From the IMG/VR virus record IMGVR_UViG_3300009093_000035, positions 62,001-126,000 of that record: DNA of 64,000 bases; one strand, written 5' to 3'. The position numbers were made by a program, and so were the translations under genes. Below are positions 38,200 to 63,807 of this stretch, in pieces (the first letter of the stretch is position 1; each line of letters opens with the position of its first letter). The notes beneath the pieces were generated by a model. It ran no database searches and was not told the DNA's origin. It was given only the letters and a program-made list of their open reading frames with translations.

Positions 38200-38679
38200 T
38201 CAGCGAGACTTCTTCTTCAAGTAGTCGGAAGCGCCCTTTGCCGTGAGCTTCGCGTTCTCCGCTACTTCCTTCGCGGCCTCCTGAATCAAGTTCTCGATAT
38301 CCGAGACCTTCTCGTCGGCGTCCAACAAGGTGTCGACGACCTCTTGAGCCTTCTTCGAGTTCATGTCCGCGAGAGCTTCCATCATGTCGCCATACAGCTC
38401 ATCGAGTTCCCCCTGGCCGACCTCGGCGGTCTTCCCAAGAAGCGGAAGGATCTCCGAACGGATCTCCGGCTTCTCGTGAGCGAGACGAATCAGGGATCGG
38501 CGAAGAGAGGAATGCTTGTTCACTTGGATAGCCCGTTCTTGGTTCTCGGCTTTGTCTTTGGAGGGATGGCGTCCCAACAGCCGGTCCCCGTCGCTCGTGT
38601 AGAGACACCACTTCTGCTCGTCGGCGGGACGGTCGTCCTGATCGGAGGGACGACACTCATGGATGACCGCCTTCTTCAT
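38200..38679 (-). CDS. IRLAH-tag protein (internal tag), 159 aa
   Basis: Small N-domain KWCLYTSDGDRLLGRH..., then LRRSLIRLAHEKPEIRSEILPLLGKTA, then an acidic helix. Confidence 0.8.
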   Translation of the reverse strand: MKKAVIHECRPSDQDDRPADEQKWCLYTSDGDRLLGRHPSKDKAENQERAIQVNKHSSLRRSLIRLAHEKPEIRSEILPLLGKTAEVGQGELDELYGDMMEALADMNSKKAQEVVDTLLDADEKVSDIENLIQEAAKEVAENAKLTAKGASDYLKKKSR

Positions 38680-38682
38680 CGC

Positions 38683-39123
38683 TCAGTCGATGAAGCCGTA
38701 GTCCCGGCCGCGACCGGAATCGTTGGACCAACCCCACCGACCCTCTTCCGGGTCGAAGCCGACGCGACCGATCGACTTGCCGTTCGTGCCGCCGTTCGGA
38801 TGGACGTAGTCCCAAGAAAGAGACCCGCCGAGGCCGCCCTGGGCGTCCGACCACCACTCGATCGAGATCGAGATCTCCGAGAAGAGAGACGAGAAGCCCT
38901 TCGGCACCTCGACCTTGACTGAGTTCTCGTTGAGGTTCGACCACTTCACCGGAGCGTCGATCTTCTTGAGAAGAACGTTGATCGCTTCGAGGGCCTTCTT
39001 CTTCGCCTCGTCGTCGAGCTGAGGAAGCCGACCGGCCTTCTTCTCCAGAAGGGGAAGGATCTCCGAGCGGATCTCGGGGTTCGCGTGGGCGAGACGAATC
39101 AGGGAACGACGGAGGGATGCCAT
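38683..39123 (-). CDS. IRLAH-tag protein, 146 aa
   Basis: MASLRRSLIRLAHANPEIRSEILPLLEKKAG. Confidence 0.8.
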   Translation of the reverse strand: MASLRRSLIRLAHANPEIRSEILPLLEKKAGRLPQLDDEAKKKALEAINVLLKKIDAPVKWSNLNENSVKVEVPKGFSSLFSEISISIEWWSDAQGGLGGSLSWDYVHPNGGTNGKSIGRVGFDPEEGRWGWSNDSGRGRDYGFID

Positions 39124-39156
39124 GCCTCCGCCGTTTCAAAGAGAATCCACCGAGGG

Positions 39157-39759
39157 CTACTCCGCGGCGATCCCGTAGAACAAGAAGCCGACCGCCGAGC
39201 CCTGGAGCACGATGTCTCCACGGACCTCCCAAGAGCCGAACCCGAACTTGTCCTTCTCGCCCGTGTCTCGGACACTTCGGATCTTCCCCGGAAGAGCGCC
39301 GCTCGCCCGAGCCCAAGTCCCGAAGGCGGATCGAGCCTCCTCGTCCGAATCGGCTCGAAGCACGACCTTCTTCGCCTTCGTCTCAGCTCGGCCGGAGACG
39401 ACTGGGATCGCAAACGCCGGACCCGACTTCGGGTTGTGTCTCACGTCCTGATTGGCGTAGGTCTTTGCCTCCGCAAGGGTCATGCCCTTCGCCCTGAGGA
39501 CGAACCCCTTCCCGGCCTTCTCCAGGATCGTCCCCGAGTACCCGCCCTCGGAATCGTCGTCACGATACGACCGAACGTCGTTCTCCGCGTCCTGTACGAG
39601 CTTCTCGAAGACCTTCTTCGGATCCGTCCCCTCGCCGTACTCCTGGAACTCGGCGCCGCCTGCGGTCTTCGAGAGGAGCGAAAGAAGTGCCGGTCGTAGC
39701 TCGGGCTTCGAGTGCGCGAGACGGATGAGCTTTCGACGCAGCTTGAGGTCGGGGGTCAC
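39157..39759 (-). CDS. IRLAH-tag protein, 200 aa
   Basis: LRRKLIRLAHSKPELRPALLSLLSKTAG. Confidence 0.8.
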   Translation of the reverse strand: MTPDLKLRRKLIRLAHSKPELRPALLSLLSKTAGGAEFQEYGEGTDPKKVFEKLVQDAENDVRSYRDDDSEGGYSGTILEKAGKGFVLRAKGMTLAEAKTYANQDVRHNPKSGPAFAIPVVSGRAETKAKKVVLRADSDEEARSAFGTWARASGALPGKIRSVRDTGEKDKFGFGSWEVRGDIVLQGSAVGFLFYGIAAE

Positions 39760-39793
39760 AGACCTCCGACCTCAAAGGAACTCCACCGAAGGT

Positions 39794-40492
39794 TCAGGGC
39801 TGAGGCGTCGTCGGCTTCTGGAGCCGTTCGGAGACCTCGATGATCTGGTGGGCCGGAATCCAGCGCGTATCCCGCTCCAGAGGCGGGCGAACGTTTCGAC
39901 CAGTGTTCTGGTTCATCGTCCAGAACACCCAGCGAAGACGGTCCTCCTCTTCGCGCGAGCGGAACTTCTCCTTCACGACCCCGACCTTCCCGGTCTTGAA
40001 GTTCACCCCGTTCACGGTCTCTTCGCGAACCGGGCCGTCCTTGTACTGGATCCGAACCTTGTCGCCCGGCTTCAGGTTCAGCTCTTCGAGCTTCTTCCGA
40101 CCCGGCTCCGCAGCGTCGTCCTTCGCGTCCATCCGGTCCTGACGACGGTCGAGAAGCTCGGCCTTCTCCTTCTCGGTCTTCGCCTTGTCGGCCTTTCCGA
40201 CGTAGCGGATCACCTTCGCGTTCGCGTCGTAGCGGGAACCCTTCGCGGGGAAGCGAAGGTCCCCCGCCGACGAAGAGAGCAGAAGTTCGGCGTTCCCGGT
40301 TCGCTTCGTCGTGACGCTGACGATCGTAGCGGGAATCCAACCCTTCCGCGTCTGGACTTCGACGGAGTCCCCTTCGTGGAAGTACCCGTCCGAAGGCGCA
40401 GCTTCCTTCAAGATCGGGATGAGGTGCTCGCGAAGCTCGGGCTTCTCGTGAGCGAGACGGATCGTCTTCGAGCGGAGTTCGTCGTCGTTCAT
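39794..40492 (-). CDS. IRLAH-tag protein with two SH3/KOW-like repeats, 232 aa
   Basis: LRSKTIRLAHEKPELREHLIPILKEAA; GDSVEV ... WIPATIV and LKPGDKVRIQY segments. Confidence 0.8.
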   Translation of the reverse strand: MNDDELRSKTIRLAHEKPELREHLIPILKEAAPSDGYFHEGDSVEVQTRKGWIPATIVSVTTKRTGNAELLLSSSAGDLRFPAKGSRYDANAKVIRYVGKADKAKTEKEKAELLDRRQDRMDAKDDAAEPGRKKLEELNLKPGDKVRIQYKDGPVREETVNGVNFKTGKVGVVKEKFRSREEEDRLRWVFWTMNQNTGRNVRPPLERDTRWIPAHQIIEVSERLQKPTTPQP

Positions 40493-40519
40493 GGTCGGTT
40501 CCTCCTGAGATCGATTCGC

Positions 40520-41311
40520 CTAGAACCGACCGCTTACGCTCAGGTACGCTCGCGTAGGGGTGCCTTCGGTCGCCGTGAACTCGAAGGCGAAGGAGAGGCC
40601 CGTTCCGATCAGCGCGATTCCGGAGACCGCGTACATGATGTTCGCCCCGAGCGCGAACGAGGAGATCTCACTGATCTGGGCTTCGGAGCACCCCGAGACC
40701 GTCTGCCCGCACGTAGCGGACAGATTCGAGTAGAGGTCCGAGGCGTGGACTCCGAGACCGATCGCTATCGCCGCCGATACCAGGGTCAAGGCTCCGGCCG
40801 CGATCGTGAAGGTGTAGTCGCCTCGCGGAACCGTAAGAACGGGCTCCTCGGGCTCCGGGAGGGCCTCTACGGGCGGTTCCGGGGTCGGGGCGACGTCCGG
40901 CTGGGGCTCTGGCTCCGGGGCTACCGCGGCCTCCGAGGGCATCCGCGCGAGGCGCCCAGTGAGGTCGGAGATGACCGTCCGTACGGTAACGGCGTCCGAA
41001 GCCTCCGGAAGCTCCCGAAGGTACCGCTGGTACGCCGCCAGGGCGCGCTCCAGGAGGGGGCGGGCGACTGCGTCCGGTAGGGCTCCCGCCGCCCGCTGAT
41101 AGCAGGCGCCGACGTTGTAGAGAAGCTCGGAAGCGTGGACGATCGCGAAGCTCTGCTCGAACTCCTGGGCGCAGTCGATCCAGCGCGATTCCGCGAACGC
41201 GCGATTCCCGCTCTCGAAGTGGGCGCGGGCCGACTCCTCTCGGGTCTGGGCCGAGACCGCCGCCGGGAACACCAGAAGCGAGAAGACGAGAAAAACGTGT
41301 AGATTTCGCAT
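40520..41311 (-). CDS. Exported TPR-repeat protein of myxobacterial type
   Basis: Signal peptide MRNLHVFLVFSLLVFPAAVSA; ARAHFESG ... LLYNVGACY TPRs; Pro-rich linker; C-terminal hydrophobic hairpins ending VSGRF. Confidence 0.75.
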   Translation of the reverse strand: MRNLHVFLVFSLLVFPAAVSAQTREESARAHFESGNRAFAESRWIDCAQEFEQSFAIVHASELLYNVGACYQRAAGALPDAVARPLLERALAAYQRYLRELPEASDAVTVRTVISDLTGRLARMPSEAAVAPEPEPQPDVAPTPEPPVEALPEPEEPVLTVPRGDYTFTIAAGALTLVSAAIAIGLGVHASDLYSNLSATCGQTVSGCSEAQISEISSFALGANIMYAVSGIALIGTGLSFAFEFTATEGTPTRAYLSVSGRF

Positions 41312-41334
41312 AGGGACGTAACCTTTCGCTCGTA

Positions 41335-41361
41335 TAACGAACGAGACGGCCGTCCCTACAC
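41335..41361 (-). promoter_or_regulatory. GTGTAR-N14-TTCGTTA element, copy 1
   Basis: GTGTAG ggacggccgtCTCG TTCGTTA, upstream of the TPR gene. Confidence 0.6.
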
Positions 41362-41364
41362 TAC

Positions 41365-42804: not shown

Positions 42805-42813
42805 GGAACTCCC

Positions 42814-43104
42814 TCAGAGAACGGCGAGCTGCCCGCCGGCTTCTACGGTGATTGCTGAACCAGCCTCGACGATGAAGGGACCTCTCACGAGGTACTGGAA
42901 GTCGGGGGACACATCCACAGTTGTGTTGGAGGAGAGGCGGAAACGGAGAGATCCGTTGCCCATTGCTCCCGCTCCGACTGGAGTCTCGGCCCCCGTGTCG
43001 TCCTTGTAGTAGACGCTCTTGTCACTGCTCTTGGCGTAGAGAGTGATCTTCCCCGTCGGAGGGGTAGGCGCCGATAGGCCGGTAGTGAGCTTCAGTTGAG
43101 CCAT
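42814..43104 (-). CDS. Small fibre-associated protein sharing an N-terminal module with 41365..42804
   Basis: LYAKSSDKSVYYKDDTGAET vs FYFKTDKRPYYKDDTGTET. Confidence 0.65.
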   Translation of the reverse strand: MAQLKLTTGLSAPTPPTGKITLYAKSSDKSVYYKDDTGAETPVGAGAMGNGSLRFRLSSNTTVDVSPDFQYLVRGPFIVEAGSAITVEAGGQLAVL

Positions 43105-43140
43105 GGAGAGTCGTATCAGACTCTCCATAGAGAGATCAGG

Positions 43141-43287
43141 CTAAGCCCGACCCGGCTTCTTTCGGAGCACCCAAATGGGAAACGCCCCGCTCGCGCTTCT
43201 CTCGGCTAGGACGAGATAGAAGTGCAGCAGGGCGCGGAAAACGGCGGGCGAACAATCGGAAAGGTCGGAGTAGTCAACGGTGTCCAT
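43141..43287 (-). CDS. Possible 48-aa ORF (not in the track)
   Basis: ATG at 43287 to TAG at 43141 fills the gap; GGAGG lies only 1 nt from the ATG, which weakens it. Confidence 0.3.
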   Translation of the reverse strand: MDTVDYSDLSDCSPAVFRALLHFYLVLAERSASGAFPIWVLRKKPGRA

Positions 43288-43324
43288 ACCTCCCTAATCG
43301 CCGCGAGGAGGGGAACCCGGAAGA

Positions 43325-43543
43325 CTATTCGTTCAGGAAGATCCGGATGGAGCACCGAGGACACCCGACGTACTTCCGGTCTGACGAGACCATGTAGAAG
43401 GGATCCTCTTCGGTATGGATCTCCGAACGACCGAAGGTGAACTCGGCCTTACATCGACCGCAGGTCGCCCGACCGATCTGAAGCTCCCCGCAGCGAGAGG
43501 CGCGAGACTGACGACGAGCTTTCCGTTGGGAGCGCCCGCTCAC
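43325..43543 (-). CDS. Small Zn-finger-like protein
   Basis: CGRC ... CPRC; GTGA-coupled to the ligase stop. Confidence 0.55.
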   Translation of the reverse strand: MSGRSQRKARRQSRASRCGELQIGRATCGRCKAEFTFGRSEIHTEEDPFYMVSSDRKYVGCPRCSIRIFLNE

Positions 43544-45516: not shown

Positions 45517-45525
45517 AGGGTCCTC

Positions 45526-46313: not shown

Positions 46314-46337
46314 GGTGTCTTCGTCTCCTCGTCGTTG

Positions 46338-46805: not shown

Positions 46806-46815
46806 CGTGTTCCTG

Positions 46816-48500: not shown

Positions 48501-48844
48501 TGTCGGCCTATCGCGACCCCCCTGGACGTTCCCCGTGTCCGTACCACTGTCGTCAAATAGCAGCGGCCGGATGGGGTGAGGGATGGACCGGGTTGTGGAA
48601 CTGGGAGTGCGTAATGTGTAAGGCGCGCGCTCCCATGTGGAGGTGGATTCTTCTGCCCTTCCTCCCTACCCTCTCTCACATACCGCTGGGACCCGGTCCC
48701 TACCATGTAGTCGACCCGAGACTGACGGAAGCTGAAGCTCTGAGAGTCGGGTGGACGAAAGAACAGATCCAGAAAGAGCGAAAGACGGGCTTACCGAATC
48801 AGCTCGATCGGTGGAAAGAATGGACCTGGGGAGAGCTTCCTTAG
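48500..48844 (+). CDS. Hypothetical Trp/Cys-rich protein (~114 aa)
   Basis: ATG overlaps the upstream TGA; C-terminal part of ORF 47990..48844. Confidence 0.5.
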   Translation: MSAYRDPPGRSPCPYHCRQIAAAGWGEGWTGLWNWECVMCKARAPMWRWILLPFLPTLSHIPLGPGPYHVVDPRLTEAEALRVGWTKEQIQKERKTGLPNQLDRWKEWTWGELP

Positions 48845-49416
48845 AAGGTCGCCCCGAGCTTCCGTAGGTACGCGAGAAGGCCATCGACCTTCGGATTCGG
48901 TACCTTGCTCTTCTGGATATCGATGAGCTTCCCGATCTGAACCGGGTCCGTCTCCTCGATCGAGATCTCCCCGGTGTCCGAAGCCCGAAGAGTTGCAACG
49001 GGCCTCGGGAGCCTCTCGTTGAAGAACACGAAGAGGAGATCTCCGCCGGCCGGGTCGTGCTTCACGATCACCGGATCTCGGACGTAGAGACCCTTCGCCG
49101 ACCACTGGATGTCGTTCCGAACGTTGGAGATCGCCCGGTAGGCCGGCGACATGAGGAGAGCGAGGTTCGCTTCGAGCTTTGCCTGAAGGAAGTTCGCCGC
49201 TTCGTCGTCTCCGATCTCCCGAAGATGGGGGATCAGGTCGTCCGAAGTGACGAACCCGGTCGAGCGAACCGCCTCGTTGATGCGCTCCTGTAGCTCACCC
49301 GAGAACTCGGCCTTCTTCGAAACCGGCTCCTTCGCTTCCTTCAGGAGCGGTAGGAGGATCGGACGAAGCCCGGGGTTCTCGTGGGCCAGGCGGATCATCT
49401 TCGAACGGAGAGTCAT
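48841..49416 (-). CDS. IRLAH-tag protein, 191 aa
   Basis: MTLRSKMIRLAHENPGLRPILLPLLKEAK. Confidence 0.8.
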   Translation of the reverse strand: MTLRSKMIRLAHENPGLRPILLPLLKEAKEPVSKKAEFSGELQERINEAVRSTGFVTSDDLIPHLREIGDDEAANFLQAKLEANLALLMSPAYRAISNVRNDIQWSAKGLYVRDPVIVKHDPAGGDLLFVFFNERLPRPVATLRASDTGEISIEETDPVQIGKLIDIQKSKVPNPKVDGLLAYLRKLGATF

Positions 49417-55482: not shown

Positions 55483-56244
55483 TTAGGCGCTGTTCACCAC
55501 AGCGATACGGATCGTGAACCAGGGATTCCCGCCCGTAGAAGCGACGAACATCTCAGGGACCCCGGCTCCGGTGAGGCTGATGTCGTCTCCGGGCATGATG
55601 ACCGTCGGAGGCACTCCGGGGTGGAAGCTCACGAAGAGCGGGAAACCTCCGGAGACCGGGTCGAGGTTCCGAATCGAGATCGTTGTGGAGTACGCCGGAA
55701 CCATGAAGTCCAGGACCCCTTCATTCAGGTAGTCCGGAAGGTTGGGCGGGAAGGCTCCCAGGGCCAGGTTCGGGGCCTTCCCGGTCACCGTGAGCACCGG
55801 CTCCTTCGTTGAGAAGAAATCGAAAGGAGGGACGATGACGATTGGACCTTCGGGAAGGTACGCGTTTGCCGCGATTGAGAACCTCTGAGCCCTCATGAAG
55901 AGCGTCTGATCGTCGGAAGGGATGTACGAGTCTCCGGCGACGACTGGAGTCGCATAGTCGTCGAGATCGAAGACACCTCGACTGAGGTCCCGACGAGACT
56001 CCTCGACTCCAGGGTACCTCTTCGCCCGAATCGACTGGCTCCGGAACTCCCCGCCGTTCGGAATCACGAACATCGGCTTCGTCCCGAACCCGCCCACGCC
56101 CATGACGTTGACCCCGTAGGCGTCGTTCAGCCGGGAGGCTCCGTTGATTCGGTAGTTCGCGACCCCTTGAAGCTTTGGGAGCGTCAAGTTGATCTGATTC
56201 GCACTCCGATACTGGACCGAAGGGATGTCTCGCTGGCGGGTCAT
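55483..56244 (-). CDS. Probable structural protein (253 aa)
   Basis: GGGGA RBS; beta-rich; no motif recognised. Confidence 0.6.
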   Translation of the reverse strand: MTRQRDIPSVQYRSANQINLTLPKLQGVANYRINGASRLNDAYGVNVMGVGGFGTKPMFVIPNGGEFRSQSIRAKRYPGVEESRRDLSRGVFDLDDYATPVVAGDSYIPSDDQTLFMRAQRFSIAANAYLPEGPIVIVPPFDFFSTKEPVLTVTGKAPNLALGAFPPNLPDYLNEGVLDFMVPAYSTTISIRNLDPVSGGFPLFVSFHPGVPPTVIMPGDDISLTGAGVPEMFVASTGGNPWFTIRIAVVNSA

Positions 56245-56260
56245 GTTCCCCTTGTAAGAG

Positions 56261-56659
56261 CTATCGGGCCTTCACCGCGCGCTCGGCTCGAACCTTGGGT
56301 TCGTAGGAAGCCCCGCTCTTCCCCTTTGCGGTCGCAAGCTTCTGGGCGTCGGCCCAGGACTCCGTACGTTCCCCGTTCACATTCGGGACGAGTCTCACCC
56401 CCGGGGCGTCCCGAACCCTTTCGGTCTGCTTCTCCCCGACTCGACGGCGCTTCGCGGCCATCTGACCGGCGACTCGGTTGTTCTTCGACGCCCACCCGTC
56501 TCCCACGAAGATCAATCCTGGGGAAGAGACCTGCTTCTTCCCGAGAGTCCCGCACTTCTCACACTTCTGAGGAGAGTCGTACTCGGCGATCGGAAGGAAA
56601 CGCTCGAACTCGTCGACCTTGCACTTCTTGTTCGGGCACTTGTACTCGTAGGTAGGCAT
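56261..56659 (-). CDS. FmdB-like zinc-ribbon protein
   Basis: MPTYEYKC ... C ... CEKCG ... SSPGLIFVGDGW. Confidence 0.8.
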   Translation of the reverse strand: MPTYEYKCPNKKCKVDEFERFLPIAEYDSPQKCEKCGTLGKKQVSSPGLIFVGDGWASKNNRVAGQMAAKRRRVGEKQTERVRDAPGVRLVPNVNGERTESWADAQKLATAKGKSGASYEPKVRAERAVKAR

Positions 56660-56663
56660 TGCC

Positions 56664-58763
56664 CTACACCTTACCGGTCGGCAGCTCCCAGTTCTTCACC
56701 ATGTCGAGAGTCGCTGCGACGTGCTTACAGACCTTGTGGATCGAGGTCGGGTCTTTGATCGAGGGCTTCGAGGCCGTGCCTCTCGGGCTCCCGTACAGGT
56801 AGTTCCCGAACTTCGCCCAGTGTTCCGGTCCCTGCCACTGCCAGAACGGACAGGAGCAAGAGACCTCCAGATCCATCCGCCCGAGCTTCGAGACGTTCTT
56901 CGCGGGCCGCGAGACCTTCATCCGAACCACGTAGGTCTCTTTCGAGGTCGCGCCCGGAACCGAGAACGTGTACATCGCGTTCTTCTGATCGAAGCGCTTC
57001 CCCTTTGGCCTCAGGGTCTTCGCTCGAAGGAGAACGTCAGTCGAAGTCTCCCCGAGAAGCTCAGCGAGACGCTTCGCGACTCTCCAAGCCGAAGCTACTC
57101 GCTGGGAAGAGGCTTCCTTGTTCACGAATCCGTGACCCGAGGGGATCACCTTCGCGGATCCGGGCGTATCCGGCATCTCTCCGCGCTCGCGGTAGACCTC
57201 GATGTCATGGCTCTGGGCCCGATCGCGGTGCTCCTGATCGGGGTAGGGAAGCGACGGGTTGACCGGAGAAGGTTCGCCCAGGTTCTGAGCCCCGGGTCCC
57301 GGGTCCATGTTGTAGCCCGGACGGTAGACCTCTCGGTAGAAGGTCGCGGCTACCGCTCGCGGATCCGGAGACCCGTAAGCCTCCTCCAGCAAGCTGAAGA
57401 AGGTGTCGAGGTCCTCATCGGTTTCGAAGACCATCCCCGAGGTGAAGGCGCGAAGCGGGACGACTTCGCAGTCTTCCGTATCCCCATCGATGTGGACGAG
57501 GAGACCCTCATCCTCGAAGCCGAGGAGATCGCCCCATCCCCACACCTCGTGGTAGAACGAAAGGGGCAAAGAAGACGAAGCCTTCTTGTCCTCTCGCTCC
57601 TTTCGCGAACGTTCAGCGATCGAGCGCGCGCCGCCCGCGGGGAGACGACGAAAGCGGTTGTGGTACTTCGGCATGTTGCGGAGGGACTTCCTCCGCTTGA
57701 ACTCGGGGCTGTTTCGGATCTTCTTGTACCGGCGCTTCGCCTGCATACGGATCCGGTTCTTCCGCCGACGGTAGTTCTTCTGGTAGTAGCGCTTCGCGTA
57801 CGACTTCTGCTTGTGTTGACGGCTGTCGTACGTCGGAAACATCCCCGCGCCCGCGGCCTCGCGGATCGCTTGGAGCATCTCCTCCTCGGACCCTTCTCCC
57901 GTCGCCGTCCGACGTGGATAGACGTTGTCCTTGTAGGGGTGGCCGTACTCTTCGCCGGGAGTCCCAGGCGTTCTCATCTTGAACTGAGACTGGGGGTTCG
58001 GCGAAGCGGGTTGGCCCTTCGTAGCCGGGCCTGGGGTGTTGTAGACGGGAGGACCGTGACGGTGCTCCACCAGGTCCACGTTGTTGTCCGTCGTCTCCGG
58101 AAGGGACCTCTCGCGGTCCGACTTCCAGGTCTCTCCGGGGGCGTGGTAGATCGAATCCCCGAGAGGATCGTTGATCCCCTTCGCGGGCTTCTCGTCTACG
58201 AAGGTACGGACCCCGGCGAGATCAGCCGCTGGAGCTTGGTACCCAGCGCCGCGAATCTGACACCCTCCGGCCGGAGCTTCCGGAGTCTTCCGGTTCTTCC
58301 AGTAGGTGGTGATGAGAGACGGCGTCCCCTTGTGGGACCCGAATCCGAAGACGAAGAACAATCCGGACTTCGGATCGACCCACTCCATCTTCTGACGATC
58401 GGACTGGAGGAGCTGCCGGTAGCGCGGATCTCGCTTCCGCTTCCAGTCCTCGATCTCCGAGACGAAATGGGAAAGCGCCTCGCGAAGATCTCGAATCGTC
58501 ACGGACCGAAGGTCCATCCGATACTGAGAGTGGGGAGTGAGAACGAACTGATTGAAGGGGTGAGGGCCGCGTTCGATCAGCGGGTCGTAGACCTCGTGAG
58601 CCTGCTGGTTCGTGAGGTCCTGGTCTCGATCCACAAGCGACACGAGTTCCTCGGCCTCGCCTGGGGGAAGCTTCTCCTTCAAGATTCGATCTACAACCCG
58701 GCACGGACCTCCGGCGAGTCCGAGCGGAGGTTGAAGATCCGCGTACTTGAAGAGGAGCGCCAT
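56664..58763 (-). CDS. Multidomain protein with C-terminal SWIM zinc finger and RVA tags (699 aa)
   Basis: VSCSCP ... CKHVAA (SWIM); very basic Arg/Lys segment; KEASSQRVASAWRVAKRL. Confidence 0.75.
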   Translation of the reverse strand: MALLFKYADLQPPLGLAGGPCRVVDRILKEKLPPGEAEELVSLVDRDQDLTNQQAHEVYDPLIERGPHPFNQFVLTPHSQYRMDLRSVTIRDLREALSHFVSEIEDWKRKRDPRYRQLLQSDRQKMEWVDPKSGLFFVFGFGSHKGTPSLITTYWKNRKTPEAPAGGCQIRGAGYQAPAADLAGVRTFVDEKPAKGINDPLGDSIYHAPGETWKSDRERSLPETTDNNVDLVEHRHGPPVYNTPGPATKGQPASPNPQSQFKMRTPGTPGEEYGHPYKDNVYPRRTATGEGSEEEMLQAIREAAGAGMFPTYDSRQHKQKSYAKRYYQKNYRRRKNRIRMQAKRRYKKIRNSPEFKRRKSLRNMPKYHNRFRRLPAGGARSIAERSRKEREDKKASSSLPLSFYHEVWGWGDLLGFEDEGLLVHIDGDTEDCEVVPLRAFTSGMVFETDEDLDTFFSLLEEAYGSPDPRAVAATFYREVYRPGYNMDPGPGAQNLGEPSPVNPSLPYPDQEHRDRAQSHDIEVYRERGEMPDTPGSAKVIPSGHGFVNKEASSQRVASAWRVAKRLAELLGETSTDVLLRAKTLRPKGKRFDQKNAMYTFSVPGATSKETYVVRMKVSRPAKNVSKLGRMDLEVSCSCPFWQWQGPEHWAKFGNYLYGSPRGTASKPSIKDPTSIHKVCKHVAATLDMVKNWELPTGKV

Positions 58764-58766
58764 GGC

Positions 58767-59336
58767 TCAGTACTTCAGGTCGAGCCCGAGGCGAATGTCG
58801 TCGGGGGTAGGAGTACGGGAGCACAGGCCAACCACGATCACATCCGTACCGCCCGTGGCGAGAAGGAGAAGCGCGTCGGGGTCCTGACAGAGGAGACCGT
58901 TCTCGCTGATCTTCAACGGGTCGTTGATCGTGTAGACCGCCGGACCCCCGGCTCGAACCCCGAAGGCGTCCAACGCGATCTTCTCGTAGTTGGTGAAGAG
59001 AAAGCGCCCGCCGCCGACGATGAGGGTAATGACGCTCGCCCCCGAGGCCACCGCAGCGAAGTCGCTCTTGTTCTGGTAGCTGGTGTAGTTTCGGTACGTC
59101 GACCGGCGCGGGTCGTTGTAGTTCTCCGAACCGTAGAGGATGAACCCGGTCGTGTAGATTCCACCGCTCTTCTCGACCGTGAACTGAGAGACGGGAGGAA
59201 CCTGAACGTCGGCGTAGTCGACCCACTGGCCTCCGAGCCATCCGGTCGAGCGAAGAATCGGCCCAGCAGTAGCGGTGAACTTGTCACCCTGCTTCAGGAC
59301 CATCACGTCGTCGTCGGTCTGATCCGCGGCTCCCAT
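58767..59336 (-). CDS. Probable head-associated structural protein (189 aa)
   Basis: Beta-rich; C-terminal VIVVGLCSRTP ... LGLDLKY resembles capsid cement/decoration folds (weak). Confidence 0.45.
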   Translation of the reverse strand: MGAADQTDDDVMVLKQGDKFTATAGPILRSTGWLGGQWVDYADVQVPPVSQFTVEKSGGIYTTGFILYGSENYNDPRRSTYRNYTSYQNKSDFAAVASGASVITLIVGGGRFLFTNYEKIALDAFGVRAGGPAVYTINDPLKISENGLLCQDPDALLLLATGGTDVIVVGLCSRTPTPDDIRLGLDLKY

Positions 59337-59338
59337 GA

Positions 59339-60094
59339 CTACACGAGCTTCTTGTGCTTGGGGAGTTCGTCGCGACCTTCCGGTAGACCCTTCGTTCCGG
59401 GCTGCTCGGTCTCGATCACGTACCGGTTGAGGGTCGAGAACTGTCTCCCACCCGGAAGAGTCTCGATCTCGGACGGATCCAGAGGCGCGTTGTTCGCTTC
59501 CGACTTCGCCTCGGATACGGTCCGATCAGCTTCGGAATCCTTCACCGACTTCACCGCGACGCCAGGCTTGTTCGAGACCGCGTTCGATTCGGAGAACTCC
59601 CGAACCTCTCTCATCTCCGGATTCCCGAAGAAGTAGGCCTCAGCCGTCGGGGCCGCCCCGGGAGGGGCCTCCGCCGCCTCTAGGAAGCGCTCCGCGACCC
59701 GATCGGGGCCGGCGGATAGGAACCGGTGGGCGACCCGCTCGGGGGCGGATTCCTTCCCCCGGGAGCCCGCGAAGGGAGCCGTCTTCAAGGATTCGTCCAC
59801 CATCTCTCGGTCGTCCAAGGAAATCCGCCCCCGCAAGAAATCCTCGCCCATGACCGTCATGGCGTAGGACGTCCGGTCGAGAGCCCGCTCGGCCGCGCTC
59901 AGACGCGCCGGGAATCCCTGTAGGATGTCCCCGGCGACCTGGTAGAGATGGTCCCTAGCCTCGGAGTCGTCCACCATCGCCTGGACCCTATCAGCCATGA
60001 GGCGGATCCGGTGGACCTCGATACGCGCAGACGTGATCCCCTCGGCGAGAAGGGACCACGCTACTTGACTGGAGGCGGTCTTGCGTTGACTCAC
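59339..60094 (-). CDS. Protein with tandem RVAxRF tags (251 aa)
   Basis: KTASSQ at the N-terminus; PERVAHRFL and PDRVAERFL. Confidence 0.7.
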   Translation of the reverse strand: MSQRKTASSQVAWSLLAEGITSARIEVHRIRLMADRVQAMVDDSEARDHLYQVAGDILQGFPARLSAAERALDRTSYAMTVMGEDFLRGRISLDDREMVDESLKTAPFAGSRGKESAPERVAHRFLSAGPDRVAERFLEAAEAPPGAAPTAEAYFFGNPEMREVREFSESNAVSNKPGVAVKSVKDSEADRTVSEAKSEANNAPLDPSEIETLPGGRQFSTLNRYVIETEQPGTKGLPEGRDELPKHKKLV

Positions 60095-60142
60095 GGCTTC
60101 ATAAGCCGCCAGCCCATAGCCTTAATCTCGTTGGGACCGAGA

Positions 60143-61294
60143 TCAGGCCGTCGCGGCGGCGACCTTCTGGCGGTGGGCCAGGTTGATCCGCGCGTGCTTC
60201 TGGACGGCCGCCGTTTCGACCGCGAGGACGCGCTCGAAGTGGTCCGGGTTCTTCTCGAAGAGATCGCAGGCGAGCTTCACGCGCTGGAGCCAGTGGATCT
60301 TCATGTCCCACTTCAGCCCGCCGCCGAGATCCATTTCGTCCCCGGCGAGGATCACTTCCTCGATGGTCTGGGGCTTCTTCGGAGCCGGAGAGACCGCCTT
60401 CGTGGCCTTCACTTCCGCCTTCGGGGCCTCCGGTTCTTCCGAAACCTCGGGAGCCTCGATCGGACCTCCGTTCACGGCTTCAGCCGAAGCGGTCGCCTTC
60501 GCTCGACGCTGCTCGGCGATGATGCGAGCGCGATCTTCGGGGTTGAGCGTGTCGATGATGTCCTCGACCTTGTCGGCGCTCGCGGCGTGGATGTCGGAGC
60601 CCTTCTTCGATTCGGTCGAGAGGATCGTCGAGGTCTTCGCGATCGTGGGCTTCTGGATCTCGGGCTTCTTTCGAGGACCCTGGTCCAGACGCGCCGTCTC
60701 TCGGGCCGCCTGGGCGCCGTCGGAGATGATCGTCCGACCCTTCGCCGGAGATCCGATCTTCCCGATCACGGTCGCGTCCTCGTTCCCCGTTGCGTCCGAT
60801 TGGACTTCCATGACGCGCTTCGTCGAGGGACCGACCGATCGCTCTTCCTGGTCCTGGTTGTGGACGGTGCGGCTGAAGGTCGCCGTCTTCGCCAGGGCCT
60901 CGGAAACGTTCGCCGAGGCTGCTGCCGCTTCCTTCCCTTTCCGCGTCGCCGGACCCATGTCCTTCTCGTCGTCGGTGACGGTCGTGGGGGAGATCCGAGC
61001 GGCCTTCCCCTTGTCCTGAGCCGAACGAACCTTCACGTCCGCCGCCCGAGGCGTGTACGTAGAGGTAGTGTCCCCCGACGGAACGAGCCACCCCACCCTC
61101 ACGCCTCCGCGTAGCTCGGGGTAGTTGTGGTCCGCGCCGCCCAGCCTGAGGGTGGTCCCGTCGAACTGGATGACGTCGCCCGGGCGAATGTCCGTGCTCA
61201 GCTTCCCGAGGTGGACCTTCACGGTGGCGCGGAAGGAGTAGAACTCCCCTGTGGTGTACTGAATTTCTACGGACGCTGGAACGGTCGAGGTCAT
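60143..61294 (-). CDS. Hypothetical protein, charged/low-complexity core (~383 aa)
   Basis: Start at 61294 after GGAGGA; small globular ends joined by a K/E/A/T-rich linker. Confidence 0.65.
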   Translation of the reverse strand: MTSTVPASVEIQYTTGEFYSFRATVKVHLGKLSTDIRPGDVIQFDGTTLRLGGADHNYPELRGGVRVGWLVPSGDTTSTYTPRAADVKVRSAQDKGKAARISPTTVTDDEKDMGPATRKGKEAAAASANVSEALAKTATFSRTVHNQDQEERSVGPSTKRVMEVQSDATGNEDATVIGKIGSPAKGRTIISDGAQAARETARLDQGPRKKPEIQKPTIAKTSTILSTESKKGSDIHAASADKVEDIIDTLNPEDRARIIAEQRRAKATASAEAVNGGPIEAPEVSEEPEAPKAEVKATKAVSPAPKKPQTIEEVILAGDEMDLGGGLKWDMKIHWLQRVKLACDLFEKNPDHFERVLAVETAAVQKHARINLAHRQKVAAATA

Positions 61295-61342
61295 GAGACA
61301 GAGTCCTCCAAGCGGGACTCTACCGAGCATCCAATGTCTTGA

Positions 61343-62551
61343 TCAGCCGGGGAGATACTCCGCGGCGATGGACACCACTTCCTTCTTGCTGAGGCCGCTC
61401 GGACCGATGAGATCGGCCACCTCGCCGTCGTAGAGAACGGACATGGCGAGATCGTGGGCGACACTCTCGATCCCCTCGCCGGAATCCCCCGGGTCCCAAT
61501 CAGACCGAGCGTCCTTTGCCCAGGCCTGAATCGCCTTGAAGAGTTTCGACTTCGCCGCCGACTGGCTGAGAGGACGCTGGAGAGCACTCGGATCTACGAC
61601 TCCCTTCGGAGCCTTCTTGATCGCGCCCCTCTTCAGGAGGTCTCGGATGAACTCGTTCGGAAGACTCTTCTTCTGCCAGGACTGCTGATCCGGATTCAGC
61701 ACCTCGGCCATGAAGGCGTCTCTCTTCACCTTCGGCATCCCCGCCGCGATCAGACCCCCGACGATGTCCTGAGCGAGGCCCACGTAGGCGTTCAGGTTGT
61801 CCCCGTAGATACGAACCTCGGTTCGAGGGTACGCTGCGAAGCGCTCGACCACGCGGGCCGGGCTCGCGGTCTTCTTCAGGTAGATCTTGTCTTCGAGCGT
61901 TCCGAACCCCGTAGCCCCCGTGTACCACCCGTTCGGAAGGCGCGCAGAGGTGATTCCCGGAACCGGCGGTTCGGGAGTCACGTAGATGTAGTCGGCCGTG
62001 AGCTTCGTGACGATCAACCCCTGGCCGGCCTGGAAGCCTCCCCGAGAGAGCTTCACCGGTTCCGTCACTGTGAGACGGTCATTGACCGCGAGCTTCGGCG
62101 GAAGGGTGTACCCCTCTTCCTTCATCTTGAAGTAGCGCGGGTACGCCTGACGGACGGTTCGCTCGTTCGAAGCAATCATCGAGTCCGAGTAGGTCTTCCC
62201 GAAGAGAAGCGGATACCACTCTGGGTGCTCGAAGAAGGGGATCGAGGCCGCCTCGTCCTCCTCGAACCAGACGTATCCGCCGGCCTTCTCTCCGATTCGG
62301 TAGGCCGGAGCCGAAAGGACCTTCCGAGCCACGCCGTCCGAGATCCCCATCCCCCCGTGGCTCGCAGTCGAGACCCAACTCACCCCTCGAAGCGAAGGAT
62401 GGTCGTACATCGTCTGGACCGTTCCCCACGGAGACTTCGGAGCCTTCGGATCGTTGTAGCTCCAGTTGCGAGTACGGGGAGAAGCCTTCTTGTCCATGAC
62501 GCCCGGCTCCTTGTCCCAGTTCGCGAGTTCTTCGTAGGTAGCGATGCTCAT
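61343..62551 (-). CDS. Multidomain protein with N-terminal DUF7007-like domain and RVV/RF tag (~402 aa)
   Basis: SPWGTVQ ... VSTASHGG ... WFEEDE pattern; KKASP and KKTASPARVVERF separate the domains. Confidence 0.7.
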   Translation of the reverse strand: MSIATYEELANWDKEPGVMDKKASPRTRNWSYNDPKAPKSPWGTVQTMYDHPSLRGVSWVSTASHGGMGISDGVARKVLSAPAYRIGEKAGGYVWFEEDEAASIPFFEHPEWYPLLFGKTYSDSMIASNERTVRQAYPRYFKMKEEGYTLPPKLAVNDRLTVTEPVKLSRGGFQAGQGLIVTKLTADYIYVTPEPPVPGITSARLPNGWYTGATGFGTLEDKIYLKKTASPARVVERFAAYPRTEVRIYGDNLNAYVGLAQDIVGGLIAAGMPKVKRDAFMAEVLNPDQQSWQKKSLPNEFIRDLLKRGAIKKAPKGVVDPSALQRPLSQSAAKSKLFKAIQAWAKDARSDWDPGDSGEGIESVAHDLAMSVLYDGEVADLIGPSGLSKKEVVSIAAEYLPG

Positions 62552-62553
62552 GA

Positions 62554-63807
62554 TCAGAGCTTCTTCATGACGTCGGTCCACTCTTCGAGGGACTTCCGGT
62601 TCCGACCCACATCGGCCTCCGTAGCGGGCTGGACCACTCCGTTGATCGTGAATCCGGAGCTGCCGTTGGCGTTCGCCTCCAGGAGCTTCTCGTAGAGTTT
62701 CACCTTCATCGGGACGAACTTCTTCAAGATCGTCGTGTCCGCTCCGGGGAAGTCCGAGAGGAACTCCGACATCTGAGCCGCCTCGGAATACTCCCCGAGG
62801 CCGGTCCACTGAACGTGGCCCTTCTCGTCGAGGTACATCGCTCCGGCGAACTTCAGGTAGGTCGAAGCCTTCGGCTTGTTCCAGCGGCCCGTCTTCGGGT
62901 CCATCGTCTGGGAGAGGAAACGGTAGCCCTTCCCGGAGTTGAACTCCAGCCAGAACTTCGCCTGGGTTCGGAGCTTGAACCCGTAGGGGTAGTCGTCGAC
63001 CACATAGGCCGAGTTCGGATCAGTGTGGCCGTAGAGGGGCTTCTTCGTCGAGGCCTTCTTCTCGAACTTCCCGCCCTTGGACTCGATCTTCTTCCGATCC
63101 GCGTCGGTGAGCCGATCCTTCTTGGCCTTGGAGTCCATCATCTCCTGCCACTCGGCTTCGTCTTCGTTCTTCGCCGGTCGCCAGGCGATCACTTCCTTCT
63201 CGGAAGCGGCGTGGTTCGACGGCATCCAGAGATCGTTCTCCTTCGCCGCGAACTCCTCCAGCTTCTGGAGGAACTTCATGTCCGCATCATCGAGAGCCTC
63301 GTAGGCCTCGTCGAGCGTCTTGTACTTCTCGTCGAAGTAGTCCCCCACCATCGCCAAGAACTTCTTCTCCACGTCGGACTCGGCGCCCTTCATGTGGTTC
63401 TTGATCCCCTTGATCATGCTCTGAGTCATGATCCCGCCCGTCTTCGAGAGGAGGGGGAGGAGAAGGGGGCGAAGCTCGGGCTTCTCGTGAGCGAGCCGAA
63501 TCGTAGCTGAACGGAGGTTGGTCATGGCTCGCTTCTCGTTGGGATGTTCTCGGAGATACCGCTCGCGAATAGAGGGATTCTCCCACTGAGGGAAGATGAA
63601 CTCCATCCCCTCCTGCTCGTAGGGAACGCGATTCTTCTTCAGCCAAGCGACGAACAGGTTGGCGGTGCCCCTGGTCCCCCACTCGACTACCGCCCGCGAA
63701 TCGTTCGCCTGGGGATTGCGCGTCGAGTAACTTGAGTTGCCGAACGTGTTCTCATCGTCCGCATCTCTCATCGCTCTGACGAGATCTTCGAATTCGTGGA
63801 AAGCCAT
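62554..63807 (-). CDS. Multidomain IRLAH-tag protein (417 aa)
   Basis: Internal EKRA-MTNLRSATIRLAHEKPELRPLLLPLLSKTGG; C-domain YGHTDPNSAYVVDDYPYGFKLR after EKKAS. Confidence 0.75.
   Translation of the reverse strand: MAFHEFEDLVRAMRDADDENTFGNSSYSTRNPQANDSRAVVEWGTRGTANLFVAWLKKNRVPYEQEGMEFIFPQWENPSIRERYLREHPNEKRAMTNLRSATIRLAHEKPELRPLLLPLLSKTGGIMTQSMIKGIKNHMKGAESDVEKKFLAMVGDYFDEKYKTLDEAYEALDDADMKFLQKLEEFAAKENDLWMPSNHAASEKEVIAWRPAKNEDEAEWQEMMDSKAKKDRLTDADRKKIESKGGKFEKKASTKKPLYGHTDPNSAYVVDDYPYGFKLRTQAKFWLEFNSGKGYRFLSQTMDPKTGRWNKPKASTYLKFAGAMYLDEKGHVQWTGLGEYSEAAQMSEFLSDFPGADTTILKKFVPMKVKLYEKLLEANANGSSGFTINGVVQPATEADVGRNRKSLEEWTDVMKKL

What the first reader, a model, noticed from the sequence alone, without database searches (positions are those of the whole stretch)
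38200..63807. Recurrent K-[T/K/E/R]-A-(S/A/G) sites at domain boundaries suggest polyprotein-style maturation cleavage
Seen directly: KKAS, KTAS, KEAS, KRA and KTA recur at apparent domain junctions (e.g. DKKASPR and KKTASPA in 61343..62551; EKRA-M and EKKAST in 62554..63807; RKTASSQ in 59339..60094; DKKASSS and NKEASSQ in 56664..58763). Established: prohead proteases of large phages cut many head proteins at short consensus sites (T4 gp21, phiKZ gp175). Inference: these multidomain ORFs are cut into separate internal proteins by a protease with K-x-A specificity.
Basis: inference. Interest (0 to 1): 0.65.

Follow-up and report, generated by a model that had tools for sequence, protein, structure and literature searches.

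The report
Candidate capsid-protease cut sites
A short basic-x-alanine-(serine/alanine/glycine) motif recurs far more often than chance at module boundaries of head-assembly and tag-bearing proteins of an uncultured phage-G-like jumbo phage; it most likely marks where the phage's herpesvirus-type capsid protease cuts them, but no protein data yet show any cutting.

Summary
The window is part of a 248.6-kb jumbo-phage contig whose capsid protein matches phage G gp27. All the cited strings are present. K-[TKER]-A-[SAG] occurs 63 times genome-wide against 22 expected, and permuted versions are at expectation. The excess is weak in the cited block (10 vs 5.4). It is strong outside the window in the scaffold, a second scaffold-like protein and the head protease.

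The protease has the herpesvirus assemblin / T4 gp21 fold. In the relatives compared, its catalytic domain is flanked by R-x-A-[SAG] (all 25) and K-(x)-A-[SAG] (37 of 39), the N-terminal site and, in this phage, the C-terminal one lying in low-confidence segments. All 50 scaffold orthologues carry 3–11 copies.

The motif also closes a 30-residue tag (LIRLAH..PELR..LLPLL) found on 11 proteins, and it adjoins a second tag, RVAxRFL.

Of the cited sites:
- Both sites in the 699-aa ORF, the 251-aa N-terminal site and KKAS of the 417-aa ORF are conserved or sit at proven module joints.
- Both sites of the 402-aa ORF are not conserved.
- EKRA-M is a fusion joint before a tag.
- The capsid protein's own KTAS is not conserved.

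Best reading (about 0.6): maturation cleavage at [KR]-x-A↓[SAG] by the prohead protease. This is inferred, not shown. It would be a new variant of a known kind.

The parts
62554..63807 (-). 417-aa ORF: N-domain (1-94), 30-aa tag (about 95-124), helical insert, KKAS, then a C-terminal alpha/beta domain (256-417).
   Evidence: The G003 orthologue is tag + KKAS + C-domain only.
63049..63060 (-). KKAS (residues 250-253) of the 417-aa ORF: candidate cut site in the coil before the C-domain.
   Evidence: AlphaFold gives coil at 245-255 between H235-244 and the confident C-domain. Eight homologues of this domain keep x-A-S three residues (L031: A-A, four residues) before P-LYGH, behind different upstream modules.
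63433..63516 (-). Core of the tag (residues 98-120, LRSATIRLAHEKPELRPLLLPLL) and its closing KTGG (122-125).
   Evidence: Tag HMM score 61 bits. Two modelled helices, 89-108 and 110-122, are followed by coil.
63523..63534 (-).
   Evidence: It lies inside predicted helix 89-108. L022 has a similar 'EKKAH-M' before an internal tag. Weak as a cut site.
61343..62551 (-). 402-aa ORF: DUF7007 (38-143), KKAS (21-24, nt 62480-62491), KTAS (227-230, nt 61862-61873), RVVERFA (233-239, nt 61835-61855).
   Evidence: Homology to the G001 orthologue spans residues 21-234 only, so both sites sit at homology break points. The orthologue reads KIAM and KVPS there.
59339..60094 (-). 251-aa ORF: N-terminal KTAS (5-8, nt 60071-60082) and two RVAxRFL copies (nt 59717-59737 and 59681-59701).
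   Evidence: [KR]-x-A/S-S-S-Q and S-x3-RVA-x-R-[FYH]-[LI] are kept in 7 genomes.
56664..58763 (-). 699-aa ORF: N-module (1-170, absent from several orthologues), basic stretch, KKAS (393-396, nt 57576-57587), middle domain, KEAS (549-552, nt 57108-57119), RVAS (nt 57090-57101), then a SWIM-like zinc-finger domain.
   Evidence: At site 1, K and A are invariant in 7 genomes while the fourth residue varies (S, M, T, E). Site 2 is [KR]-[EK]-A-[SH] in all 7.
60143..61330 (-). 395-aa ORF with KEAA (nt 60923-60934) in a low-complexity stretch.
   Evidence: The LR745208 orthologue has KKAA at the same place.
38200..40492 (-). Four adjacent tag-bearing genes (159, 146, 200 and 232 aa). The tag is followed by KKAG (nt 39031-39042), KTAG (nt 39658-39669) and KEAA (nt 40397-40408). 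In the 159-aa gene the tag is internal.
48841..49416 (-). 191-aa tag-bearing gene (tag, then KEAK).
   Evidence: Tag HMM 48.5 bits; alignment A1.
21106..21943 (-). 107-aa tag-bearing gene (21620-21943) and 170-aa gene (21106-21618) with RSAS-PE-RVAEKFA (nt 21304-21342).

Best explanation
The window belongs to an uncultured jumbo phage with a phage-G-type capsid. Its prohead (head-maturation) protease is a serine-protease candidate of the herpesvirus assemblin / T4 gp21 fold, encoded outside the window.

I propose that this protease recognises a short site, [K/R]-x-A followed by S, A or G, in flexible segments. By analogy with assemblin's x-x-A↓S/T sites, it would cut after the alanine.

Inside the assembled prohead it would then do four things:
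1. Free its own catalytic domain at sites on both flanks.
2. Chop the scaffold and a second scaffold-like protein, which carry several sites each, including sites just before their C-terminal capsid-binding peptides.
3. Trim tags and linkers from passenger proteins. Two portable peptides mark these passengers: a 30-residue helix-turn-helix tag (LRSKLIRLAHxKPELRxxLLPLL) that ends in K-x-A-[AGS], and a short RVAxRFL motif that is often preceded by K-x-A-S.
4. Thereby cut the multidomain ORFs at window 56.6-63.8 kb at their module joints.

Shown: the motif, its order-specific excess, its conservation at particular linkers, the protease gene and its fold.
Inferred: cleavage itself, the scissile bond, the targeting role of the tags, and the virion location of the window's ORFs.
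For: Enrichment
- Genome-wide excess with permuted controls at expectation.
- By class, K.A[SAG] observed vs expected: scaffold+protease+202-aa protein 19 vs 5.1; RVA-motif proteins 20 vs 8.2; tag proteins 11 vs 4.2; all others 81 vs 64; the window's enzymes and giant ORFs 5 vs 7.7.

The protease
- phrog_18299, lying between portal and scaffold.
- The AlphaFold core is confident over residues 40-260. Best structural matches are VZV protease (Z 10.7), T4 gp21 (Z 9.3) and HCMV protease (Z 8.0).
- R23-x-A25-[SAG] is invariant in 25 relatives and lies in the disordered N-terminus.
- K-(x)-A-[SAG] is present in 37 of 39 distinct post-domain linkers against 11.3 expected, mostly 38-42 residues after the PAF motif, with controls at expectation.
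- In this phage KKAA (268-271) falls in the low-confidence segment that begins at residue 263, just after the last strand (258-261).
- Tunturi_5 gp331 (KTAA N-terminal, KVAS C-terminal) and phage G gp19 (KIAG and KTAA N-terminal, KVAS and KIAS C-terminal) show the same layout.

Scaffold proteins
- 50 distinct orthologues carry K[KTE]AS 73 times vs 5.2 expected and K-x-A-[SAG] 206 vs 31, with 3-11 per sequence in the 30 whose counts were printed; permuted forms reach only about 2x.
- Several positions are conserved, including sites before the C-terminal peptide.
- The 202-aa head protein keeps KKAS at its N-terminus and K-T-A-S-x-FGLF at its C-terminus across variable acidic linkers.

Tags
- Most of the 46 tag copies seen (11 own, 10 in LR745208, 25 IMG/VR loci) end in [KR]-x-A-[SAGT].
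- Selection acts on the protein: 47% of same-residue codons differ between copies.

Module joints
- The PLYGH domain is preceded by x-A-S behind three different upstream modules, and it starts free-standing ORFs in distant homologues.
- Both 699-aa sites are conserved in 7 genomes.
- KKAS and KTGG lie in coil.

Gene context
- The window's block lies 1-14 kb from the capsid gene in G003, G001 and LR745208.

Precedent
- Assemblin R- and M-sites cut after Ala: YLQA-T and VQA-S (PMC4498786).
- The giant-phage protease gp245 removes propeptides at a short motif that occurs repeatedly in some propeptides (PMC10052503).
Against: - There is no proteomic or biochemical evidence for any cut.
- Genome-wide, K.A[SAG] positions are kept between this phage and LR745208 only slightly more often than control patterns: 23-31% vs 12-30%. 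Most copies are therefore probably not functional sites.
- The capsid protein's KTAS (19-22) is KTPQ/KTPT in many relatives.
- Both 402-aa sites are lost in the G001 orthologue, one with Pro in place of Ala.
- The fourth residue at 699-aa site 1 can be M, T or E.
- Part of the KKA excess comes from K/E/A-rich repeats of the EAKKAD kind.
- Phage G's putative scaffold gp21 shows no such motif, and the excess in Bxz1-type LinStu gp97 is slight (7 vs 4.4).
- A-S-P-x before a helix is also a common helix N-cap arrangement.
- The catalytic residues were not mapped structurally. H128 and S179 are only invariant candidates.
Confidence: 0.6

Rival explanations
1. The motif is a conserved but uncleaved element. 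It could be part of docking peptides or flexible linkers, for example a binding epitope for the capsid shell, scaffold, portal or a chaperone. It could also be a lysine-rich linker ending in an Ala-Ser helix cap. The proteins would then stay full-length.
For: - It is tightly joined to two evident interaction peptides: LLPLL-K-x-A-[AG] and K-x-A-S-P-x-RVAxRFL.
- K-T-A-S-x-FGLF at the C-terminus of the 202-aa protein reads as one unit.
- S-P-x-x before a helix is a classic N-cap.
- Tags can be internal or C-terminal, as in L036, where removal is not needed.
Against: - The same four-residue pattern recurs in unrelated contexts with nothing else in common: the disordered flanks of the protease, the acidic scaffold repeats and the 699-aa linkers.
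- Multiple copies per scaffold, 3-11 in each of the 30 orthologues whose counts were printed, fit degradation sites better than a single binding epitope.
- Sites on both flanks of a protease domain, kept from this phage to phage G, are the usual picture of autoprocessing.
Confidence: 0.2
2. Processing is real but another enzyme does it. One candidate is the phage's C39-family cysteine peptidase (G000 209629-210528), acting on tags that end in A-G or G-G like double-glycine leaders. Another is a host protease.
For: - Pfam Peptidase_C39 scores 31.4 bits, above the 22-bit cut-off.
- Many tags end in AG, AAG, AGG or GG: KTAGG, KTGG, KEAAGG, KQAG.
- The peptidase gene lies in a cluster with tag-bearing and RVA-motif genes, and the protein itself carries RVAARFL.
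- From my own knowledge, staphylococcal phage 80alpha head proteins are trimmed by a host protease.
Against: - C39 leader peptidases cut after GG, GA or GS, not after K-x-A. Most conserved sites here are A-S or A-A with no Gly.
- The Pfam scan showed no transporter domain in this protein.
- C39-like domains in phages are often cell-wall hydrolases (my own knowledge).
- The motif's concentration in the scaffold and on the prohead protease's own flanks points to the prohead protease.
Confidence: 0.1
3. The recurrence is a by-product of composition, low-complexity K/A/E-rich segments and shared ancestry of paralogous tags, with no function of its own.
For: - EAKKA-type repeats contribute: AKKA 22 vs 2.5, mostly in a few proteins.
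- A[TKER]K[SAG] is also somewhat enriched, 37 vs 21.6.
- Positional conservation genome-wide is weak.
- The tag copies are paralogues, so their terminal K-x-A is not independent evidence.
Against: - Permuted patterns of identical composition are at expectation genome-wide and only about 2x in scaffolds, against 7-14x for the motif.
- K and A are invariant in otherwise unalignable linkers of the protease and the 699-aa family.
- The motif appears in non-homologous proteins and in phages as distant as phage G.
Confidence: 0.06
4. [RK]-[RK]-x-S is a basophilic protein-kinase site, and the serine is phosphorylated.
For: RKAS and KKAS fit an R/K-R/K-x-S pattern.
Against: - Ser is replaced by Ala or Gly at many conserved sites, whereas Ala at the third position is the constant residue.
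- The family scans I ran covered only part of the genome and showed no kinase.
Confidence: 0.02

Closest known systems
Herpesvirus assemblin (maturational serine protease) with its release (R) and maturation (M) sites
   Same: - The modelled fold is the same (VZV protease Z 10.7, HCMV protease Z 8.0).
- In this clade the protease domain is followed by a site in a flexible linker and then a C-terminal helical part, like UL26.
- Sites lie near the scaffold's C-terminus, ahead of the presumed capsid-binding peptide, like the M-site.
- The site has the form x-x-Ala followed by Ser/Thr/small; PrV has YLQA-T and VQA-S (PMC4498786).
   Different: - Here a Lys or Arg sits two residues before the Ala, where herpesviruses have a hydrophobic residue.
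- The scaffold is a separate gene, not nested.
- There are many more sites per scaffold.
- The scissile bond is not determined.
- The catalytic triad has not been mapped.
T4 gp21 prohead protease with capsid targeting sequences of internal proteins (cut at L/I-x-E)
   Same: - Fold match to gp21 (5jbl, Z 9.3, 127 residues aligned).
- A short conserved N-terminal peptide is shared by several otherwise unrelated small proteins and is followed directly by the putative cut site.
- The scaffold carries many sites.
- The protease is flanked by sites at both ends. (That T4 works this way is my own knowledge.)
   Different: - The motif differs (Glu at P1 in T4).
- The tag here is 30 residues rather than about 10, and it can be internal or C-terminal.
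- A second tag (RVAxRFL) exists.
- No packaging experiment has been done.
phiKZ gp175 / SPN3US gp245 giant-phage prohead proteases (S/A/G-x-E)
   Same: A giant phage in which many head proteins carry propeptides removed at a short motif, with several motif copies inside some propeptides (PMC10052503).
   Different: - Different motif and an unrelated capsid lineage: phage-G type, 292-aa capsid protein without a delta domain.
- Nothing here has been tested by mass spectrometry.
Encapsulin cargo-loading peptides / microcompartment encapsulation peptides
   Same: Short portable peptides, attached through flexible linkers to diverse enzymes, that could direct them into an HK97-fold shell. Here the motif-bearing enzymes include a Topo IB, an InPase-domain protein and a C39 peptidase.
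   Different: - Those peptides are not removed by a protease and bind the shell directly.
- No binding partner has been identified here.
- The resemblance is functional speculation.

Membership tests
Prohead protease of the assemblin fold (herpesvirus S21, T4 gp21 S77, HK97 gp4 S78) | Assemblin-type beta-barrel fold | tested here: met
   AlphaFold model of residues 1-290 with 25 sequences (pLDDT 74; core 40-260 mostly above 75). VIA-align top three: 1vzv_A Z 10.7, 5jbl_A Z 9.3, 8j3s_A Z 8.0, then KSHV protease Z 6.5. Foldseek's best rows are gp21 and herpes proteases, but weakly (E 0.06).
Prohead protease of the assemblin fold (herpesvirus S21, T4 gp21 S77, HK97 gp4 S78) | Catalytic Ser and His conserved | tested here: inconclusive
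   H56, H128 and S179 are invariant in 25 relatives. They were not superposed on the catalytic residues of gp21 or assemblin, because the tools give no coordinates.
Prohead protease of the assemblin fold (herpesvirus S21, T4 gp21 S77, HK97 gp4 S78) | Gene lies within the head module, between the portal and the scaffold/capsid genes | tested here: met
   Order on the minus strand: TerL 155946-157793, portal 153492-155273, protease 146982-148427, scaffold 145459-146985, decoration protein, capsid 143445-144323.
Prohead protease of the assemblin fold (herpesvirus S21, T4 gp21 S77, HK97 gp4 S78) | Cuts itself, the scaffold and head proteins in the prohead | not testable with these tools
   Only indirect evidence: conserved sites on both flanks and in the scaffold.
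Assemblin-like Ala↓Ser specificity | Ala invariant at the residue before the cut, with a small residue after it | tested here: inconclusive
   Ala is the most constant residue at the conserved sites, and the next residue is S, A or G at most of them. M, T, E and H also occur at the next position. The scissile bond is unknown.
Capsid targeting sequence (T4 type) | Short conserved N-terminal peptide shared by unrelated head-internal proteins | tested here: inconclusive
   11 proteins share the tag, 8 of them at the N-terminus. The tag is found only in this clade. A tag-bearing gene sits between the decoration and scaffold genes in LR745208. Virion location is not known.
Capsid targeting sequence (T4 type) | Tag is removed at a protease site at its end | not testable with these tools
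   [KR]-x-A-[SAGT] follows LLPLL in most of the 46 copies. Removal has not been observed.
Viral polyprotein | One ORF yields several stable mature proteins | not testable with these tools
   The modules are separable in evolution: the 417-aa and 699-aa orthologues lack whole modules. No protein products are known.
Double-glycine leader / C39 peptidase system | Leader ends in GG, GA or GS and is cut by a C39 domain, usually fused to an ABC exporter | tested here: not met
   A C39 domain exists, but the Pfam scan showed no transporter domain in it. Conserved sites are mostly A-S or A-A, and only some tags end in G-G.

The most novel reading that the evidence does not exclude
Phage-G-type megaphages run a modular cargo system. 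Two portable peptides, the 30-residue LIRLAH..PELR..LLPLL tag and the RVAxRFL motif, load diverse enzymes and DNA-binding proteins into the prohead. Candidate cargo includes a Topo IB/HAD protein, an InPase-domain protein, a C39 peptidase and SWIM and DUF7007 proteins. An assemblin-fold protease with herpesvirus-like Ala↓Ser specificity then removes the tags and separates fused modules. Under this reading, gene fusion and fission at K-x-A-S joints is a routine way of evolving the ejected proteome.
Probability: 0.3. Interest if true: 0.75.

Novelty: new variant of a known kind. Interest (0 to 1): 0.6.

Why it matters
Capsid maturation by a prohead protease is well known for T4, HK97, phiKZ-like phages and herpesviruses. 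I found nothing on cleavage specificity for the large, environmentally widespread clade that shares phage G's capsid protein. That clade includes 558 IMG/VR contigs with at least 89% identical capsid protein, up to 618 kb long.

A [KR]-x-A↓[SAG] rule would allow several things:
- Mature virion proteins could be predicted from sequence in hundreds of uncultured huge phages.
- Candidate packaged or ejected proteins could be picked out by their tags.
- A phage protease with a herpesvirus-like Ala-Ser site preference would add to the evidence for shared descent of the two proteases.

The prediction can be tested directly in two cultured relatives, Tunturi_5 and phage G.

Tried and rejected
- DNA search of window 56000-63900 against GenBank phages: no match.
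- Pfam and PHROGs on the cited ORFs: only DUF7007 and a zinc ribbon.
- The search for related loci with the 251-aa protein: no relative found. Orthologues were obtained instead through the genome search on five relatives.
- Sequence search of the protease against the PDB: nothing. The fold search was needed.
- The capsid protein's KTAS as a propeptide site: rejected, because KTPQ/KTPT are common in relatives.
- Genome-wide positional conservation against LR745208: only marginally above controls, so it is not used as support.
- Complex prediction of the protease core with the scaffold's C-terminal 69 residues: 'no answer' (score 0.02). This is not evidence either way.
- Word search with a 98-aa tag protein: three hits, none named.
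- Tag search in GenBank phages: only LR745208.
- Fold search of the 417-aa model: no clear match.
- Bxz1-type LinStu gp97 (protease fusion): motif 7 vs 4.4, not informative.
- Papers on phage G and Tunturi_5 give no cleavage data.
- A DNA-level cause for the tags and for KKA: rejected.

Full report
**What the window is.** The window is bases 62001-126000 of a single 248,579-bp virus contig with 61% G+C. My own gene calling gives about 300 genes, nearly all on the minus strand. There is also an array of 44 tRNA genes and a tmRNA.

The head module lies outside the window:
- Large terminase at 155946-157793 and portal at 153492-155273.
- A 'head maturation protease' at 146982-148427 (phrog_18299, E 5e-16).
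- A K/E/A-rich scaffold-like protein at 145459-146985.
- A 292-aa capsid protein at 143445-144323.

The capsid protein matches PDB 6wkk_A, named there 'Gp27 major capsid protein' (E 6e-61), and phage G gp27 at 39% identity. It is at least 89% identical on 558 IMG/VR contigs of up to 618 kb. The closest records are the uncultured 485-kb phage LR745208 (terminase 70% identical) and the isolate Tunturiibacter phage Tunturi_5 (30%). The contig is probably a fragment.

**Checking the observation.** All quoted strings are present in the named ORFs.
- Genome-wide, K[TKER]A[SAG] occurs 63 times against 22.0 expected from within-protein shuffles (z 8.6). K[TKE]AS occurs 18 times against 5.1.
- Three permuted patterns of the same composition sit at expectation.
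- KKA is the most over-represented tripeptide.
- The excess is frame-specific at the DNA level.

The excess is unevenly spread. For K.A[SAG], observed against expected:
- Scaffold + protease + a 202-aa head protein: 19 vs 5.1.
- Proteins with the RVA motif: 20 vs 8.2.
- Tag-bearing proteins: 11 vs 4.2.
- The cited block itself: 10 vs 5.4.
- All other proteins: 81 vs 64.
- The window's enzymes and giant ORFs: 5 vs 7.7.

**Two portable peptides.** Listing the motif in context exposed two recurrent modules.
- The first is a 30-residue tag, LR(S/R)xLIRLAHxKPELRxxLLPLL. It is found in 11 proteins: 8 at the N-terminus and 3 internal. It also occurs 10 times in LR745208 and on 25 IMG/VR loci. Among GenBank phage records it occurs nowhere else. 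Its copies differ at 47% of same-residue codons, so the protein, not the DNA, is under selection. In most copies LLPLL is followed within a few residues by [KR]-x-A-[SAGT].
- The second is RVAxRF(L/A), often preceded by K-x-A-S-P-x. It is found in about eleven proteins. These include a Topo IB/HAD protein of the head module, an InPase-domain protein and a C39-family peptidase.

**The protease and its flanks.** An AlphaFold model built from 25 orthologues is confident over residues 40-260 and disordered over 1-33 and 263-290. An exhaustive structural comparison ranks VZV protease (Z 10.7), T4 gp21 (Z 9.3) and HCMV protease (Z 8.0) first. Foldseek's weak top rows are the same families.
- In the disordered N-terminus, R-x-A-[SAG] is invariant in all 25 sequences.
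- After the last strand, 37 of 39 distinct linkers carry K-(x)-A-[SAG] against 11.3 expected. Most lie 38-42 residues past the PAF motif, while reversed or permuted patterns are at expectation.
- The much shorter proteases of Tunturi_5 and phage G show motif copies on both sides of the catalytic domain as well.

Sites conserved on both flanks of a protease domain, the N-terminal one and this phage's C-terminal one in low-confidence segments, are what autoprocessing sites look like. The layout recalls the assemblin R-site.

**Scaffold proteins.** Fifty distinct scaffold orthologues hold K[KTE]AS 73 times against 5.2 expected and K-x-A-[SAG] 206 times against 31. Every orthologue whose count was printed (30 of the 50) has 3-11 copies. 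Permuted forms reach only about twice expectation. Several positions are conserved, among them x-A-S before APPATPGY near the N-terminus and sites ahead of the C-terminal DLSKLWE..VSK(V/I)FG peptide. The 202-aa protein keeps KKAS at its N-terminus and K-T-A-S-x-FGLF at its C-terminus, while the acidic linkers between them vary freely. Tunturi_5's scaffold-like gp332 and its annotated 'DNA ejection protein' gp328 are also rich in the motif.

- 699-aa ORF. Seven genomes keep K and A at the first site while the fourth residue varies. All seven keep [KR]-[EK]-A-[SH] at the second site, just before an RVA-type helix and a SWIM-like domain. The N-terminal 170 residues are a separate module that several orthologues lack.
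- 251-aa ORF. [KR]-x-A-S-S-Q and the RVAxR[FY]L motif are conserved.
- 417-aa ORF. The G003 orthologue is simply tag + KKAS + C-domain. Eight homologues of that domain keep x-A-S three residues (A-A, four residues, in L031) before P-LYGH, behind a tag, an RVA motif or a large N-terminal region. Distant homologues begin free-standing ORFs at about that point. The AlphaFold model puts KKAS and KTGG in coil next to confident elements.
- 402-aa ORF. Homology to its one orthologue runs exactly from site to site (residues 21-234), but the orthologue reads KIAM and KVPS.
- EKRA-M is the joint where an upstream domain is fused to a tag that keeps its initiator Met. It lies in a predicted helix.
- Gene context. 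In G003, G001 and LR745208 this gene block lies 1-14 kb from the capsid gene, which fits a head-related role.

**Evidence against, and limits.**
- Nothing shows cleavage.
- Most K.A[SAG] copies are not positionally conserved between this phage and LR745208: 23-31% against 12-30% for controls.
- The capsid protein's KTAS is not conserved.
- Low-complexity EAKKA repeats inflate the counts.
- Phage G's putative scaffold lacks the motif.
- The complex prediction gave no answer.

**Interpretation.** The most economical reading is that [KR]-x-A-[SAG] is the recognition site of the assemblin-fold prohead protease. By analogy with assemblin (YLQA-T and VQA-S in PrV; PMC4498786), the cut would fall after Ala. 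The protease would release its own domain, degrade the scaffolds, and trim tags and linkers from passenger proteins. This parallels T4 gp21 with its capsid targeting sequences, and the giant-phage protease gp245 with its repeated motif copies in propeptides (PMC10052503). I put this at about 0.6. The rivals are:
- an uncleaved docking or linker element (0.2);
- processing by the C39 peptidase or a host enzyme (0.1);
- a composition artefact (0.06);
- a kinase site (0.02).

**Novelty.** Prohead-protease processing is a known kind. The site, its herpesvirus-like form, its association with two clade-specific portable tags, and the phage-G-type lineage would make this a new variant. I found no report of cleavage specificity for this lineage in the papers I could search.

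Noticed in passing
window 29087-30115 (-): A full-length Volactin-family actin homologue (PF25216, E 3e-72) encoded by the phage. Its orthologue in LR745208 is 69% identical.
   Followed up: no
window 38200-40492, 48841-49416, 21620-21943, 63448-63516; also G000 140908-141435, 186496-188034, 188120-188416, 205876-206547: A 30-residue tag (LRSKLIRLAHxKPELRxxLLPLL) on 11 otherwise unrelated proteins. It is usually N-terminal, three times internal (twice with a Met exactly at its start, suggesting gene fusions), and once C-terminal in a relative (L036). It appears only in this phage clade.
   Followed up: partly
window 59681-59737, 61835-61855, 57090-57101, 21304-21324; G000 149738-152974, 16184-17731, 205278-205841, 207548-209521, 209629-210528: A second short motif, RVAxRF(L/A), often after S-P-x. 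It occurs in about eleven proteins, including enzymes (Topo IB/HAD, InPase domain, C39 peptidase). It is conserved in orthologues of the 251-aa and 699-aa proteins and is present in LR745208.
   Followed up: partly
G000 209629-210528 (L009:4629-5528, -): A 299-aa protein with a Peptidase_C39 domain above Pfam's cut-off, in a cluster with tag-bearing and RVA-motif genes. It could be a second processing enzyme or a cell-wall hydrolase.
   Followed up: no
G000 149738-152974 (L006:4738-7974, -): A 1078-aa protein combining a eukaryote-type topoisomerase IB core with a HAD domain of 'Swiss Army Knife' RNA-repair proteins. It lies inside the head module, between the portal and protease genes.
   Followed up: no
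G000 about 188.4-199.6 kb (L008:3442-14553): An array of 44 tRNA genes and one tmRNA (tag peptide ANDSSYDQLAQAA), all on the minus strand.
   Followed up: no
G000 143445-144323 (L005:17445-18323, -): A 292-aa capsid protein of the phage G gp27 type. It is at least 89% identical on 558 IMG/VR contigs ranging from 4 kb to 618 kb, whereas the other proteins compared with LR745208 (capsid 93%) are mostly 30-85% identical: an unusually conserved shell protein.
   Followed up: partly
whole contig G000: The 248.6-kb contig is probably incomplete. Relatives of 252-266 kb are rated 57-59% complete, and an identical 62-aa protein lies on a 472,929-bp contig in the protein collection.
   Followed up: no
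window 56664-57100 (-), C-terminal part of the 699-aa ORF: A CxC...CxH pattern (SCSCPFWQWQGPEH...VCKHV) typical of SWIM zinc fingers, conserved in 7 genomes. It follows a strongly basic R/K-rich stretch (residues about 320-390). Pfam gave no hit.
   Followed up: no
window 473-5002, 7216-12270, 14147-17689, 21953-27289 (-): Four giant ORFs (1509, 1684, 1180 and 1778 aa) with no family match in Pfam. They have orthologues in LR745208 and are presumably tail or baseplate parts.
   Followed up: no
L175 (Mycobacterium phage LinStu gp97): In Bxz1-type mycobacteriophages the homologous protease domain is the N-terminus of a 1286-aa fusion protein directly upstream of the capsid gene.
   Followed up: no
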